Below, piece after piece: positions 37,157-44,620 of a stretch of DNA of 64,000 nt. This DNA comes from Ostrea edulis (Eukaryota): positions 29,326,001 through 29,390,000 of the forward strand of contig NC_079171.1 of assembly GCF_947568905.1 (NCBI RefSeq). Reading direction: 5' to 3'. The notes beneath the pieces were generated by a model. The model had not been told where the DNA came from, did not search any database, and worked only from the letters and a program-made list of their open reading frames with translations. Position 1 is the first letter of the stretch. Each line of letters starts with the position of its first letter. A program made the position numbers and the translations under genes.

Positions 37157-38004
37157 CTGCAATGATACATGAGATATGATTTTAACATGGAATAGGTATA
37201 GGGTTACCGTATACACATGCAAAATCAGACTTGTGGTAATCGATCTTAAAGTTATCCCATTGAAGGGAGTGATCAGGCCTGCTACTTGTAGCTGCACTGA
37301 TCTCCGGGGTGGAGGGCTCCTTGCTGGTGGTTCTAAAGAATTTATTATGACATGGTAATGAACAATAATCTAGAGTGGGGATCAAAGTAAATTAAGTCAT
37401 TGCAAACCATCACTTACCTTCCGGTCACTTGGGACGACTGTGCAGTCATTACCACGACATGAATTTCCCTTCCCCTGGCCATCTTGTGTGCATGCACAAG
37501 ATGCGTGTCCAGGCGAAGGACGGCTTTTCCACACTTGGGGCAGTCCTTTAGTCTGAAGACGGAAAAATGGATTTGAGAAAGAAAATGAAAATTAATAGTA
37601 CCTTTCGATGCATGAAGAATGTGATTGTTCGGTTTTAATATGCTGCTGGTTCTTACTTAGATTTGTTCTTCCTGGCCTCTGCCCTGGACCTCTTGTGTAC
37701 GGTCCGAAGATGGCGAGGAAGGTGAACAACCTCCACTCCAAACTCCGGACAGGCGGTCCTGGTTCTCGCGCCGTCCCCCTTTCGGCCACCTTCCTCTTCT
37801 TTGCATGACTCTTGATGTTATCGTCTGTAGATGAAAAACCCATTGAATTACAATCCACACATATTAATAGTTTATGGTAATAATTCTACCAAATGCTAGA
37901 AATGAAGTACGTTACCCTCACCCTCTTTCTCTTCCCCCTCACTGGAGGAGACTTCTCCAGATTCTGGGAAAGGCATGAAGGTGGGGTCGTCTTCCGCCTC
38001 CCTC
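37157..38004. repeat. ~850-bp direct repeat; second copy at 39694-40155 plus 43933-44313
   Basis: Near-identical sequence from ctgcaatgatacatgag to cgcctccctcca; copy 2 is interrupted by KolobokP and lacks a 12-bp stretch present in copy 1. Confidence 0.92.
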
Positions 38005-40358
38005 CAATTGAGCTGCAATTTACTCGTCGACAAAAAGTCTTAGTCCAAATTCTACCGTTTTCATATCATAATTTTTTTATCGTTTGGACTACCATAAATT
38101 TTATTACATATTCTTTCTTCTCTCAACGAGACGAACAATTTGATGTAAATATGTTGGGCTTTAGTACGAATAACAAACCCTAACCCTAACCCTGACTTTT
38201 TGTCAATAAATGCATACCACATTCTCTTCCTCCTCTTCTATCTCCTCGATGAGGGGACCCCGTTCTTCTGTTGGGTTGCCTTCTATCATCTTATGCCAAA
38301 AACAATATGATATTAATCATATGAAAGAAAATCCTTGTTACGGTTTATGCAAATACCAAACAAATATATGCATACCAGTTGGTCTTTGTTCCTCATGACG
38401 GTTTTTATGGCTCTCGTGACCTTCACCGCGTCCGCCTTCCTCTGGGTGAGGATATAAAAACTATCCTGAGTGGCGGACCGGTGATTCATCTGAGCCGCCA
38501 ACTTTTCCTTTGAAAGGGGGAACCTGTCTCTGACCTGTAAAAGAGGGTAGAAATGTTCCATATCTTTACCTATGCATTCCTAGTTCCATTCTTACGTTTT
38601 TTGATCAAATGACTTTAAAATGTACCGATGTGGCGGTCCCCTGCCTCATCTTCGTTCCTGAGATGTCTTTCTCGAGACCAGTCGCCTTCCAAATGGATTT
38701 GATGGCCTTGTCCATTGTTGATGTTGTCATTGGTCCGGGCGATGGTGTTCTGCTGGGGAAAGTCACGAAGACAGGTGCAGAGTCTCCCTCCAGGGAGCTG
38801 TTGTATCCAGGCAACCTGGTTCTCCCCTTCAGGAATCCCTGTACCTGCCTCCAGAGACGATCCTCCAGCACCAGGGTCACTGGCGATATCTGGCCAGTCT
38901 TGTGGGCTGCGATCTGAAAGATAATCCAACACTTTGATTATACTCTTGTGTCTTTCACATTGATAAAGGTGACCTTTTATTTGTGTCATGGAAGAAGACT
39001 TACCACACACACACGGCAATCCTCCTGCAGCTCGGCATTTTTCAAATGCCGCAGCTTAAAGTTGACAAGGGCCCCCACCCTCTGGCCGTTGTCAATGATA
39101 ATGTTGAGGATGAGGAAGTTCCGGTCCAACACAAACTCCCTCTCCAGCACGACTTCCTGAGATGGCTTTTGAAAGTCCTCCAGGATCCGTTCCGCCTGTT
39201 GGTATATCTCAGACTCCTGGAATCGCTGGATCTCCTCCGGCTCTATCCTTTGCTCTGTAAATAAACAATACATTGAAGATAATGGGAGATAAACTACTAC
39301 TCTACCAATTACCAAAAGATAGTATTTAATGTACCATTGTTAGTGACTATTTTAACCACACACCGCTTGTTGATCGAGGTCTGTAACGACCTCGCCCATC
39401 TCTGCAAGCGTGCGGCCACCTGTGTGTAGGGCCCGATCTCCAGCTCCTTCACGTCCATCAGGTACTCGTAGAAGTCTCTAAAAGACCCTAAGAAAATTAA
39501 GAAAGCAAATTCTACAAAAATGTCACTAAAGGTTCAGATTCATAATTCCAATACAAAATCAGATTGTGCATTCATAATAGTTTACCAATATAACTTCTTA
39601 TAGTCCCTGGCGCATATTTATTCGTTGCCCAGGAAAACCACTGATTTCTTACGCGGACCACATCCACAACAGCGTAGGGTCCAGATGTCGCCACTGCAAT
39701 GATACATGAGATATGATTTTAACATGGAATAGGTATAGGGTTATCGTATACACATGCAAAATCAGACTTGTTGTGGTAATCGATTTTATAGTTATCCCAT
39801 TCAAGGGAGTGATCAGGCCTGCTACTTGTAGCTGCACTGATATCCGGGGTGGAGGGCTCCTTGCTGGTGGTTCTAAAGAATTTATTATGACATGGTAATG
39901 ATCAATAATCTAGAGTGGGGATCAAAGTAAATTAAGTCATTGCAAACCATCACTTACCTTCCGGTCACTTGGGACGACTGTGCAGTCATTACCACGGCAT
40001 GAATTTCCCTTCCCCTGGCCATCTTGTGCGCATGCACAAGATGCGTGTCCAGGCGAAGGACGGCTTTTCCACACTTGGGGCAGTCCTTTAGTCTGAAGAC
40101 GGAAAAATGGATTTTGAAAAAGAAAATGAAAATTAATAGTACCTTTCGATGCATGTATAGGAAAAACACCAGAATTGCCTAGCTACAGGGCGCCGCCATT
40201 GTGGACACCCAAAGTTGTGTGGAGAAGAAAAGTTGACAGGAGATCTGATTGGTCATTAACAGGAGATCTGTCCTATACTGAGGTAGCGAGAACCAGTTTA
40301 TGAGGTAAGTGTAAGAAAGTAGTGCATGTTTAGCGCCATTTGTCAGTTTTACAATAAA

Positions 40359-40766
40359 ATGGATGCATTTTTTGATAATTTGAAAGAAAAAGTAAATCGT
40401 AAAAGTGTACGGGGCCCCCAAAGGGGCACCTGCATCATTTGGAGGGGTAGGATTTCCCCCTCTGGCTATGGGCTACAAACTGTCTACTGGCCAGAGGAGG
40501 GAAGAAAGGTGGAAAAGGCCCACAGAGTTGCCCTTATGGCAGAGTGGAAACTGACTCGGAGTCAGTTTCCACGTGACAATGTAGAATGCAGCCACCTCTG
40601 CCATACCAAGCTGTGTGTGAACCCCTAGCATCTGGTAGTGGAGTCCCACTCTATCAACCAGGAGAGGATTCACTGCCAGTTGCAGGGGGTGTGCAGCAAG
40701 TCACACATGCCCGGGTGCATTTTATGTAATTACATGTATTTTACATGTAAATTTCATTTCATTTAG
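40359..40766 (+). pseudogene. His-Me finger nuclease of KolobokP-like copy 2
   Basis: MDAFF...CIIWRG...GYG...KAHRVA...ECSHLCHTKLCVNP*HLVVESHSINQERIHC; single in-frame TAG at 40626-40628. Confidence 0.9.
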
Positions 40767-42850
40767 CATATTTAGATGGTGGTTTTGAATAGCTGTGCTC
40801 AATTTTTTTGCATAATTTCTGCTCTTTGATGATTTTGAGAGCATCAGATTTTTTCTATAGTTTACTTCTTCCTGATGTTGTTCATAAAGTTTATACAATT
40901 TTCTTCTTCTAATTACTCTGGTATTTCTATACTTTTTAGATTTTTGGTACATTTTTTGTCTTTCATAATTATTTTGAATATTTTTCAGAGATTGGCTAAC
41001 CCTCCTCCCCCCCCCCCCCCCCCCCCCCCTCTGGGATAGGAGCACCCACACCAGCACATAAGGCCTTTAGGGATTCCCCAGGACCATTATTTGTACTGTG
41101 AGCTGTGACATTCTTGGGTAGTGAACGCCTTAGACGTCGATTAAAGCTCTCCACTTTCTGTGTATTGTGGGAAAGTTATGTAGTAGTTTATTTTTCTCTG
41201 CTTTTGAATTTCTGGGCATGATTTTCTGTACAGATTGGTCTTTTTTGATGGCCTTTCTGACATTTTCGGCAAGATGCCGTGTGTCGAGAAAATGTCTAGG
41301 TTTGTCCTGCAGCTTGCCTTCAGCATGCAAAGACTCTGCGGCCTTGTATATCGTGCTGTCAGGATCTGATGTTATGTCCTTGACACATAAATCATTCTTG
41401 AGAAGGTCTTCCATGCCTTCCTTGGCCCAGGTGAATTCATCACCGATGTTTTTGGCCTTAGGTATATTCGCCCCACATGTCTGCTCAGTGCACACATGAC
41501 TGGGATTGTTCTTGAGATGTTGTCCTTTGGGGCATTTTTGTTTTTAGTTACTAAAGATATTATTTCGTGACTACTGGTCACATTCTCTGCAATTGAGAAG
41601 ACGGTTTGTGTAGCTGGCTGGAAGGGGGTTTCCCCTACCCCAGAATATAGGGCGTTATTATACATCCCGTCGCACTGAATTCCTATGGTTTTTGGACTTT
41701 TGGTCCCCCTCAATTTATTAATATCAACTAATTTCTTACATCTTTTTTTTCATATCAGACTTGTTTAAGGTGATTACTTTTTGCATAATGGTGTTGCTTG
41801 TTTTTTGTAGAGAAGACTCGGCTGGAGGTGGGGTGTTGGTTGACATGAGGATTTTACGAAGAGAAGAACTGCCAATGGGGGTTTGACTGAGACCTATTTG
41901 TAGGCCATAGTTTATTGCTGCTGCTTTGCTTCCCCTGGAACCGGATTCTACTTCGACATAGAGGCTATACATTTTGGACACGTAGGTGCAGGTGTTACAT
42001 TTAAGCCGTAACCTAGTGCCCAGGCCACACCTCTCTTCAGAGTCCAAGTCCCAGGTTAGGTCACCATCACAGCCTGGATTGGCCCACCCATGTTCTTTGA
42101 ACTCTGCGTTGAACATGCCACATGTCTTTTCCAGATGCAGCAGTCTGGAGGAGTCATTTTCACACCTGCCAAAATCAGTTATGTACCTGATTACTTCCTA
42201 ACCAGGCAAGTTCATTTTCAGAAATTAGAGTTACTTCCCTTTGACTATACTTGTTCTCAAAGTTGAGTCAAGAGGCTCATCACAGTCCCTAACAACTGTT
42301 TTTTGTAACTTTCTCTTCATATGAATGAACAATTATTGTAATGTTGCTATAATTTAGAGAGTTTATTAATTATAAAATTAATTAAGCTAATTAAATTTAC
42401 AGGATCTTAGGGATACCCCTTATTTCAGCCAATTTGGCCATATATGGGCCTATTCTGAGAATTAGAAAAAATATTTTCTACTCAAAGAGGTTTTGTTTCA
42501 TAATTTAAGAAAGTTAGAAGAATTGTAATCGTTACCCTGAGGATTCAGCCTGATTTAAAGTCTCATGGTTTCCTTCCTTTTTCAGGGGTCTTGGCCGAAG
42601 CAGTCGGTGGCACCCAGGCCTGAGCATCATTTCCTGCTCCTCGCACAGAGAGGGTGGATGCGTCACCAGTTGTAGGGTTTCCCTGTCAACTCTCGTGAAT
42701 GGTGCAGGTGAGTTTTCTTTTTTTTTCATGTAATTTCCCCTTGTTGTGAGGCACATATTTTGGCTTAAAACCATCATTATTCCCTTTTTTTGAATTTTCC
42801 CATCTTTGAAAACTGACATAATTCTGCTAGGAATATTCTGTCTGAAGTGA
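40722..42850 (-). pseudogene. KolobokP-like DDE transposase (copy 2), frameshifted and internally deleted
   Basis: RLLRP, CDGDL, LKCNTCTY, TPPP, IQCDGMYN (D), ITSDPDS (D), LDTRHL, TQKVESFNRRLRRSLPKN (E). 5' start approximate. Confidence 0.8.
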
Positions 42851-44365
42851 AATTCACTTGTGATGTGCTTTTTCCAGTGCTCTATCAGCATCATGTCAAG
42901 TTTAAGTGATATCGTGTAATAATTTATTATCATGATAGGAATTAGCAAGCAACCCTCACTGCAAAATGTATCTGAGTTAAAGAGGGTAGTGACAGTTTTA
43001 CTGTTACAGAGAAACAACACTACTAGATCAGATTACCCCTCATATGTTTTGATAACCTCCTATTAATTGGCTGTCAGCAGCTTAGTGAATTGATTCTGAA
43101 TTGGAAAAGTAAATGCATTTTGAAAGCATTTTTCCTTGATAAATTAAGATTTGTTGGCCATTTTTTTCAAAAACCGGGTAGAATGTACCCTGAATATGTA
43201 AATTACATGTGAATCCTCACATCCTCTTGAAAACATAAAAAATAAGACAATAAGACTGTTATTTACATTTTTACTTCATTAAGCACTGTAAAAAGTCATT
43301 ATAAAGTTGACATTCAACACAGCTTCATGTCACAGTTGAGTTCATCATGTGTGAGGGGTTACATTATATAGATAGTCATAATTTACATGCTTTTTCATGT
43401 TACATATTTTACATGTACTATGTGCATGTTATCTAAAAATGTCAAATTGGCCACTTTTTCACTTTGTTTTCCATTTGGTTATAGGAAAAACACCAGAATT
43501 GCCTAGTTACAGGGCGCCGCCATTGTGGACACCCAAAGTTGTGTGGAGAAGAAAAGTTGACAGGAGATCTGATTGGTCATTAACAGAAAATCTTTGTGAT
43601 GGAATTTAATAGTGAAATATAAGTGATAAAAATGACAGGTGACATAACAGAATATGTAGAAAGATACAGAAGTTATAAGGGAAGATCTGAGTGGAGAGGT
43701 GATATTTGGATGGACAATTTCATTCAGTGCGGATCTACACCAGTTGTAAACAGGCCAAAATTTGAAGGAAAAACGCAACGGCAAGCCGTATATTTTTTGG
43801 TGGAATTTTGAAGGGGAGATGATGAACTTTGCTGAATGGTGACTGATTTTTTGAAAATTGGCTTAATAAATAATTGACAGTGATTGGAATTTGTATGGAA
43901 GTCTATGGGAAAACATTTGGTGGTGTTTGTCCATGAAGAATATGATTGTTCGGTTTTAATATGCCGCTGGTTCTTACTTAGATTTGTTCTTCCTGGTCTC
44001 TGCCCTGGACCTCTTGTGTACGGTCGGAAGGTGGACAACCTCCACTCCAAACTCCGGACAGGCGGTCCTGGTCCTCGCGCCGTCCCCCTTCCGGCCACCT
44101 TCCTCTTCTTTGCATGACTCTTGATGTTATCGTCTGTAGATGAAAAACCCATTGAATTACAATCCACACATATTAATAGTTTATGGTAATAATTCTACCA
44201 AATGCTAGAAATGAAGTACGTTACCCTCACCCTCTTCCTCTTCCCCCTCACTGGAGGAGACTTCTCCATATTCTGGGAAAGGCATGAAGGTGGGGTCGTC
44301 TTCCGCCTCCCTCCACCTCCATCACCACCCTCCTCCACTCCTCATCTTCGAGAGGCTCGTCCTCC

Positions 44366-44620
44366 GATGTCTGAAATAATTGTAGTTGTTATTGAATATG
44401 CAATCTAGAAAGAGAACGAAGTGACTAGAAGCTTTAAGTTAAATACTTACATCCTCCTGGTCAGAGACCAGGGCTGTCTCTACAGCTTCTTTCTCGCCAG
44501 ATGTCTGAAACAGTTGTAGTTGTTATTGAATATGCAATCTAGCAAGAGAACGAAGTGACTAGAAGCTTTAAGTTAAATACTTACATCCTCCTGGTCAGAG
44601 ACCAGGGCTGTCTTTAACTT
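44366..44620. repeat. 134-bp tandem duplication containing a small minus-strand exon and its intron
   Basis: Units start at 44366 and 44500; on the minus strand each has ...ccctggtctctgaccaggaggat|gtaag. Confidence 0.85.

What the first reader, a model, noticed from the sequence alone, without database searches (positions are those of the whole stretch)
40150..43940. KolobokP-like element with asymmetric terminal repeats and TATA junctions, with its empty site in the same window
Seen: the right terminal unit is ~450 bp (GG...CC); the left is only ~114 bp (40160-40273), sharing the first ~105 bp and then ending TGTCC. TATA borders three of the four unit junctions (40156, 40274, 43480). The empty paralog reads gcATGaag, while the filled site reads gcATG-TATA-GG...CC-ATGaag, i.e. 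an ATG (or CATG) duplication plus an extra TATA rather than TTAA. Known: KolobokP elements have several-hundred-bp terminal direct repeats with short TIRs, and Kolobok normally targets TTAA. Inference: non-canonical integration, possibly from a circular or tandem intermediate carrying the TATA spacer.
Basis: partly seen in the sequence, partly recalled or inferred. Interest (0 to 1): 0.7.

Follow-up and report, generated by a model that had tools for sequence, protein, structure and literature searches.

The report
Broken KolobokP transposon copy in oyster
This is a dead copy of an already described kind of oyster jumping gene (KolobokP). Its lopsided ends come from a private deletion, and its only unusual feature is four extra bases (TATA) that it seems to have carried along from its previous location.

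Summary
The element (40160-43932) belongs to KolobokP (Kojima & Bao 2022). It has a 449-bp terminal repeat with its own 12-bp inverted ends (GG..CC), a Kolobok-type transposase and, on the opposite strand, a His-Me finger nuclease. In this copy both genes are broken.

The family is young in this genome, which another note of this scan calls flat oyster. There are 105 repeat left ends, about 99% alike, as solo repeats, monomers and tandem multimers.

The short left repeat is a private 335-bp internal deletion with templated filler. No other copy has it, and the other copies are symmetric. The TATAs at the two inner junctions are a family constant, and the same was published for another KolobokP family.

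TTAA is not expected here. I found 36 independent insertions with perfect 4-bp duplications of the form A/T-N-N-A/T, and none is TTAA.

The outer-left TATA is a real anomaly, because the empty paralogous site lacks it. The family's target preference favours reading the junction as ATGA duplicated with TAT added. All 14 irregular insertions I could pair also have TATA against one outer end. This fits carry-over of donor flank, but is not proven. Reads could not be examined.

The parts
40153..40155 (.). Left copy of the target duplication: ATG, or ATGA if the A at 40159 is counted, or CATG from 40152
   Evidence: Comparison with the empty site at 37611-37615. The family's duplications always begin with A or T, which favours ATGA over CATG.
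40156..40159 (.). Extra TATA, absent from the empty site; identical to the last 4 nt of the internal region that precede every internal repeat
   Evidence: In the genome, 48 of 105 repeat left ends are preceded by T-TATA, the end of the internal region.
40160..40273 (+). Left terminal repeat, internally deleted (114 bp; repeat positions 110-444 missing). The 12-nt word ACAGGAGATCTG at 40259-40270 repeats 40236-40247 and acts as filler at the junction.
   Evidence: The deletion junction is unique in the genome.
40274..43483 (.). Internal region (3210 bp), starting and ending with TATA
   Evidence: It is 98.75% identical to the 4448-bp copy at C4:73714605-73719052 and differs by 310-bp and 36-bp deletions plus small indels.
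40359..40766 (+). His-Me finger (His-Cys box) nuclease gene, broken by an in-frame stop at 40626-40628
   Evidence: Pfam PF05551 matches both pieces. The uninterrupted 135-aa version in the long copy scores 2e-12. Its best solved relative is I-PpoI, weakly (E 0.06).
41130..43020 (-). Kolobok-type DDD/E transposase gene, in pieces: frameshifts and a 310-bp deletion at 41167
   Evidence: PF20700 at 1.3e-23 and 2.3e-5 on the pieces. The long copy holds an uninterrupted 485-aa frame scoring 3e-47. It shares long motifs with KolobokP-9_CGi in the published alignment. The upstream stretch 42532-43020 has no Pfam match in either copy; its inclusion is inferred only from strand and position.
43484..43932 (+). 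Right terminal repeat, complete (449 bp, GG..CC)
   Evidence: More than 40 genomic copies are 99% identical.
43933..43936 (.). Right copy of the target duplication (ATGA)
37611..37615 (.). Empty target site in the paralogous ~850-bp segment (cATGa)

Best explanation
A KolobokP cut-and-paste DNA transposon (terminal repeat, internal region, terminal repeat) inserted into one of two ~850-bp paralogous segments after they had diverged. This copy cannot move by its own proteins: its transposase gene is frameshifted and lacks 310 bp, and its nuclease gene has a stop codon. The short left repeat is a private 335-bp internal deletion. A 12-nt word copied from 23 bp upstream sits at the junction, which is the signature of break repair with template slippage. 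The deletion is not a property of the family or of the integration. The inner TATAs are the fixed borders of the internal region. The outer-left TATA was most likely brought from the donor site. The mobilised unit began at a repeat that was preceded by TATA (an internal repeat of a monomer or multimer, or a copy sitting in a TATA duplication), and four donor bases stayed attached to the left end. They were either a 4-nt single-strand extension of a linear excised element or the spacer of an abutted-end junction. At the target ATGA the last A paired, the remaining three bases were kept, and the result reads ATG-TAT-A-GG. Shown: the anatomy, family membership, privacy of the deletion, and the net addition relative to the empty site. 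Inferred: donor origin of the TATA and its physical form.
For: Anatomy and empty site. Family traits: searches (solo repeats, monomers, multimers; proteins), and Kojima & Bao 2022, PMC9587614. Privacy of the deletion: where only the window itself matches across the junction. Census, paired by hand: 36 independent insertions have perfect 4-bp duplications, with first base A in 27 and T in 9, and only 2 are TATA. Another 14 insertions are irregular, and every one has TATA against one outer repeat end (in one case, C3:57049075, four bases out, after an extra GTCC). One solo repeat (C6:18963662) reads TATA | repeat | ATCA-TATA, that is a foreign tetramer plus a clean duplication, and ATCA is the duplication of two other family copies. 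Outer-left TATA occurs 8 times in about 57 junctions against 2 in 36 expected from clean duplications (binomial p = 0.013). By base composition TATA is expected at 1%. The published excision footprints lose 1-5 flank bases on one side, which would be the reciprocal event.
Against: This is the only insertion with an empty site in hand. The other irregular junctions are AT-rich and were interpreted after the fact from 8-24 nt of flank. Four of them (C3:19146972, C1:103205839, C1:2213305, C8:23097048) fit no simple carry-over rule. Four right flanks share 7-8 nt (TATAATG) that look like the start of a variant internal region, so some one-sided TATAs may be leftovers of a truncated internal region rather than carry-over. 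No abutted repeat-repeat junction exists in the assembly. No reads could be examined, so neither the assembly at this junction nor the existence of circles was checked.
Confidence: 0.65

Rival explanations
1. Ordinary insertion with a canonical ATGA duplication, followed by an unrelated 3-bp insertion (TAT) in the left duplication and an unrelated deletion in the left repeat: pure post-insertion decay.
For: The left repeat has certainly suffered one private mutation. The copy carries many other small indels relative to the long copy. The region is AT-rich.
Against: The added bases recreate exactly the tetramer that borders every internal repeat; a random tetramer does so about 1% of the time. 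All 14 irregular family insertions show TATA at one outer end, against 2 of 36 regular ones.
Confidence: 0.2
2. One reading: integration from a circular or head-to-tail junction (right end, TATA, left end), as in IS3/IS256-type copy-out-paste-in, with the spacer retained on one side.
For: Kojima & Bao raise the same possibility from one-sided excision footprints. The spacer length would equal the 4-bp duplication length. TATA is palindromic.
Against: No right-end/0-12 nt/left-end junction is present anywhere in the 895-Mb assembly, although circles would not be assembled. The evidence does not separate this from a linear element with a 4-nt overhang. It is counted here as one form of the best explanation, not as a separate event.
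Confidence: 0.25
3. A non-autonomous LTR retrotransposon (TRIM-like): direct terminal repeats, 4-bp duplications, solo repeats and tandem arrays.
For: The architecture is superficially the same.
Against: The repeats end GG..CC with a 12-bp inverted repeat, not TG..CA. There is no tRNA-type primer site after the left repeat and no purine tract before the right one. [quoted passage not shown]
Confidence: 0.01
4. Tyrosine-recombinase insertion of a circle at a shared ATG core (Crypton or DIRS style), which gives an apparent ATG duplication.
For: Weak tyrosine-recombinase-like exons lie nearby at 38.6-39.3 kb. There is a short shared core at both junctions.
Against: Those exons belong to the flanking segment, not to the element. 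The family makes 4-bp duplications of 36 different target sites (25 distinct tetramers), which a fixed-core recombinase would not do.
Confidence: 0.02

Closest known systems
KolobokP (Kojima & Bao 2022, Mob DNA 13:24, PMC9587614), nearest listed family KolobokP-9_CGi of Crassostrea gigas
   Same: Terminal direct repeats of ~450 bp with their own short inverted ends (5'-RR..YY-3'). DDD/E transposase plus an opposite-strand His-Me finger nuclease. Solo repeats and (repeat-internal)n-repeat multimers. Duplications of 3-5 bp without strong target preference. An internal region bordered by a palindromic tetramer (TATA in KolobokP-1_MeMe, TTAA in KolobokP-7_MeMe).
   Different: The exact repeat termini of this family are not in the paper's supplementary sequences, and no Ostrea species is listed there. 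This copy has a deleted left repeat and four extra donor-like bases at one end. Insertions carrying extra flank bases were not reported in the paper, only excision footprints that lose them.
Classical Kolobok transposons
   Same: Related transposase; RR..YY termini.
   Different: Classical Kolobok duplicates TTAA and has simple inverted ends. Here 0 of 36 duplications are TTAA and the ends are long direct repeats.
piggyBac excision chemistry (from general knowledge, not tested here)
   Same: The excised element carries 4-nt flank-derived 5' overhangs. A palindromic tetramer at the donor allows seamless resealing, which would explain why a single TATA is left where a repeat has excised.
   Different: The transposases are unrelated, and no biochemical data exist for Kolobok. 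This is a mechanistic analogy only.
Bacterial IS3/IS256 copy-out-paste-in and composite transposons
   Same: A composite of two repeat units around a cargo. Circle junctions have a spacer of duplication length taken from one donor flank.
   Different: This is a eukaryotic element. The transposase is encoded in the internal region, not in the repeats. No circle junction was observed.

Membership tests
KolobokP | Long terminal direct repeats of ~450 or ~660 bp at both ends | tested here: met
   The family repeat is 449 bp and symmetric in the other copies. In this copy the right repeat is complete and the left is reduced to 114 bp by a private deletion.
KolobokP | Each repeat has its own short inverted ends (11-18 bp), with termini 5'-RR and YY-3' | tested here: met
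   GGAAAAACACCA versus the reverse complement GGACAAACACCA: 11 of 12 match, with GG..CC termini.
KolobokP | Internal region encodes a Kolobok-type DDD/E transposase | tested here: met
   PF20700 at 3e-47 on the uninterrupted 485-aa frame of the long copy and 1.3e-23 on the window fragment. A 15-residue exact word and further motifs are shared with KolobokP-9_CGi_1p in the published alignment. No tree was built.
KolobokP | Downstream His-Me finger (His-Cys box) nuclease on the opposite strand | tested here: met
   PF05551 at 2e-12 in the long copy and on both halves in the window. It lies on the opposite strand to the transposase. Its best solved relative is I-PpoI over the catalytic SHLCH..NP.HL..ES block.
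KolobokP | Solo repeats and (repeat-internal)n-repeat multimers flanked by duplications of 3-5 bp | tested here: met
   At least 18 solo repeats have 4-bp duplications. There are multimers of 5 repeats (C3:19146972..) and at least 12 repeats (C7:29412187..).
Classical Kolobok | TTAA target duplication | tested here: not met
   0 of 36 clean duplications are TTAA. This is expected for the KolobokP branch.
LTR retrotransposon / TRIM | TG..CA repeat termini, primer binding site, polypurine tract, reverse transcriptase in autonomous members | tested here: not met
   Termini are GG..CC with a 12-bp inverted repeat. No primer site or purine tract is visible at the inner junctions. The long copy's two long uninterrupted frames with a family match are a transposase and a nuclease.

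The most novel reading that the evidence does not exclude
KolobokP elements leave the donor with about four flank bases still attached to one end, either as a staggered, piggyBac-like cut or as a circle-junction spacer. These bases are sometimes built into the new site. The window copy, with its empty site, would be the first insertion-side evidence, reciprocal to the published one-sided excision footprints. It would make the unknown transposition chemistry of Kolobok testable from genome sequence alone.
Probability: 0.35. Interest if true: 0.55.

Novelty: new member of a known kind. Interest (0 to 1): 0.35.

Why it matters
The element itself is ordinary: a defective copy of a published transposon lineage in one more bivalve. 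The modest value lies in the junction. Nobody has studied how Kolobok transposases cut and join DNA, and the paper that defined KolobokP leaves open whether a circular intermediate exists. An insertion whose empty site sits 2.5 kb away and which carries exactly the tetramer that flanks internal repeats is a clean natural example of donor-flank carry-over. About a quarter of this young family's insertions show similar one-sided TATAs. That gives a concrete prediction for reads, other haplotypes or a cleavage assay.

Tried and rejected
I therefore have no read support for the junction, no test for presence/absence polymorphism and no search for circle-junction reads, and read laying was not used.

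2. Abutted repeat ends: a genome-wide pattern search for right end, 0-12 nt, left end gave 0 matches.

3. Published consensus: the exact repeat termini, in either orientation, are not in the supplementary files of PMC9587614. The nearest family was therefore named from transposase motifs only.

The flanks of most family copies are known only as the 8-24 nt shown by pattern searches, and I paired left and right ends by hand from coordinates. All 12 own-genome searches are used.

5. One call failed on pattern length, and I repeated it with a shorter pattern.

6. Readings rejected: an LTR/TRIM element, tyrosine-recombinase integration, and CATG as the duplication. No clean family duplication starts with C, and only 1 of 36 ends with G.

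Full report
**Observation**

- A 114-nt direct repeat, 40156-40269 versus 43480-43593, is 97% identical.
- The right unit, GG..CC, is 43484-43932 (449 bp). Its two ends form an 11-of-12 inverted repeat.
- The left unit, 40160-40273, has the first 103-109 nt of that repeat, followed directly by its last five (TGTCC).
- TATA stands at 40156, 40274 and 43480.
- Window 37157-37614 matches 39694-40155 (97.2%), and 37611-38006 matches 43932-44315 (94.9%). A paralogous segment therefore preserves the empty site: gcATGaag, against gcATG-TATA-GG..CC-ATGaag in the filled site.

**What it is**

The internal region carries two genes.
- On the minus strand there are fragments of a transposase: Pfam PF20700, 1.3e-23 and 2.3e-5.
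- On the plus strand there is a His-Me finger nuclease (PF05551), split by a stop codon at 40626-40628.

The whole genome (895 Mb; window = C8:29326001-29390000) holds 105 exact copies of the repeat's first 20 nt, and more than 40 full repeats are 99% identical. They occur in three forms.
- Solo repeats.
- Monomers (repeat-internal-repeat).
- Tandem multimers, for example five repeats at a 2855-bp period on C3 and at least twelve at 2830 bp on C7.

This is the architecture of KolobokP (Kojima & Bao 2022, PMC9587614):
- terminal direct repeats of about 450 bp with their own inverted ends and RR..YY termini;
- a DDD/E transposase and an opposite-strand His-Cys box nuclease;
- solo repeats, multimers, and duplications of 3-5 bp.

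A 4448-bp copy at C4:73714605-73719052 has an uninterrupted 485-aa transposase frame (PF20700, 3e-47) and an uninterrupted 135-aa nuclease frame (PF05551, 2e-12). The nuclease's best solved relative is I-PpoI, weakly (E 0.06), over the catalytic block. The transposase shares a 15-residue exact word and further motifs with KolobokP-9_CGi in the paper's alignment. The repeat termini are not among the published sequences. Another note of this scan calls the genome flat oyster; I did not check that. No Ostrea species is in the paper's table.

**This copy is defective**

Against the C4 copy it is 98.75% identical, but it differs as follows.
- It lacks 335 bp of the left repeat.
- It lacks 36 bp, and 310 bp inside the transposase gene (at 41167).
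- It has 17 extra bases in a poly-C run.
- It has several 1-3-bp indels.
- The nuclease gene has a premature stop.

Other copies carry different internal deletions, as is usual for cut-and-paste elements.

**The asymmetry**

A query spanning the left-repeat deletion junction matches in full only the window itself. All other hits stop at the breakpoint (40 of 146 candidates were scored). Every other repeat in hand is full length, or nearly so.

At the junction, the 12-nt word ACAGGAGATCTG (40259-40270) exactly repeats 40236-40247. The intact repeat has only an 8-of-12 match there. This is filler copied by template slippage during break repair. The asymmetry is therefore a private deletion, not a family trait and not evidence for an unusual integration. 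Whether it arose before or after insertion cannot be told, because a cut-and-paste donor would be gone.

**The inner TATAs**

48 of 105 repeat left ends are preceded by T-TATA, the end of the internal region. About as many right ends are followed by TATACTGAGG, its start. The paper reports the same TATA borders for KolobokP-1_MeMe, and its supplementary junction sequences show TTAA for KolobokP-7_MeMe. The two inner TATAs are thus a known family constant.

**Target duplications**

I paired left and right flanks from the fetched loci and from pattern matches. The pairing was done by hand from coordinates.
- 36 independent insertions have perfect 4-bp duplications.
- The first base is A in 27 and T in 9. 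The last base is A or T in 33.
- ATAT occurs 6 times, AAAT 4 times and ATTT 3 times. TATA occurs only twice, and TTAA never.

For the window copy, CATG would be an odd target, whereas ATGA occurs elsewhere (C2:47767442). The junction is therefore best read as ATGA duplicated, with TAT added before the last A on the left.

**The outer TATA**

It is a net addition relative to the empty site. The right junction falls exactly at the repeat end and the target is duplicated, so the event was transposase-mediated and not a random capture.

Fourteen further or similar insertions are irregular, and each has TATA against one outer repeat end.
- On the left: this copy, C3:19146972, C1:103205839, C6:18963662, C6:24722049, C4:12149044.
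- On the right: C10:8419271, C6:38629819, C4:80121943, C1:2212814, C4:47322761, C4:73714595, C8:23100843, and C3:57049075 (after an extra GTCC).

This compares with 2 of 36 among regular insertions. Outer-left TATA occurs 8 times in about 57 junctions (binomial p = 0.013 against 2/36).

One solo repeat reads TATA | repeat | ATCA-TATA. That is a foreign tetramer plus a clean duplication, and ATCA is the duplication of two other copies.

A single rule reproduces nine of the fourteen junctions: the element arrives with a 4-nt donor-derived extension, which pairs with the target gap as far as it can, and whatever does not pair is retained. Examples are ATG-TAT-A here, TA-TA-AT at two TAAT targets, and T-ATA-TAT at a TTAT target. 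The TATA/TATT and TATA/AATA pairs need a looser version, in which a nearly matching extension is joined with one mismatch.

There are three cautions.
- This is post hoc and the sequences are AT-rich.
- Four cases fit nothing.
- Four right flanks share TATAATG, the start of a variant internal region, and one array ends in 17 nt of internal region. Some one-sided TATAs may therefore be truncated internal regions rather than carry-over.

Only the window copy, with its empty site, excludes truncation.

**Mechanism**

Most likely, the mobilised unit began at a repeat preceded by TATA, and four donor bases travelled with it. Their physical form is unresolved. It could be a staggered cut leaving a flank-derived overhang; that is analogous to piggyBac and would also explain why a single TATA remains where a repeat excises. 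Or it could be the spacer of an abutted-end circle, as the paper speculates. No abutted junction is in the assembly, and reads could not be searched.

**Verdict**

This is a known kind of element in one more species. The asymmetry is decay. The TATA is a small but real anomaly that gives a testable hint about an unstudied transposition chemistry.

Noticed in passing
window 37157-38006 and 39694-40155 + 43932-44315: An ~850-bp segment is duplicated in direct orientation (95-97% identical), with weak tyrosine-recombinase-like reading frames between the copies (38.6-39.3 kb, minus strand; PF00589 at E 0.022 only). The transposon sits in what looks like a minus-strand coding exon of the upstream copy, about 12 nt before a possible GT splice donor.
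   Followed up: partly
window 44366-44616: Two tandem copies of a 117-nt unit, 97% identical, start to start 134 nt, just right of the insertion.
   Followed up: no
G000:C7:29412187-29442883 and G000:C3:19146972-19158841: Long KolobokP multimers: at least 12 repeats at a 2830-bp period, and 5 repeats at 2855 bp. The C3 array has no matching duplication (left GGAG-TATA, right AATT), although CGGAG recurs 15 nt into the right flank.
   Followed up: partly
G000:C9:40568547 versus G000:C5:65606624: A diverged repeat end on C9 is followed by TA plus the same 10 nt (TAAACATTAC) that flank a solo repeat on C5, after which the flanks differ. This could be flank transduction or paralogy.
   Followed up: no
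G000:C3:95476997/95482245, C4:47328480/47323233, C5:27551944/27546374: Three copies have a repeat-to-repeat spacing of 5.25-5.57 kb, longer than the 4.0 kb of the copy with uninterrupted frames. They may be a variant with an extra insertion that was still mobile.
   Followed up: no
window 41004-41030 and L040:~390-450: A poly-C/G run differs by 17 nt between copies. It lies where the transposase reading frame changes before a conserved C-terminal tail (..KLYKLYEQHQEE..) that aligns with KolobokP-9_CGi.
   Followed up: no
G000:C8:57086586 and 57089413; C3:16512730: Variant starts of the internal region exist (TATAAAGGAG.. and TATAATGA..) beside the main TATACTGAGG. The C8 array ends 17 nt into such a variant.
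   Followed up: partly
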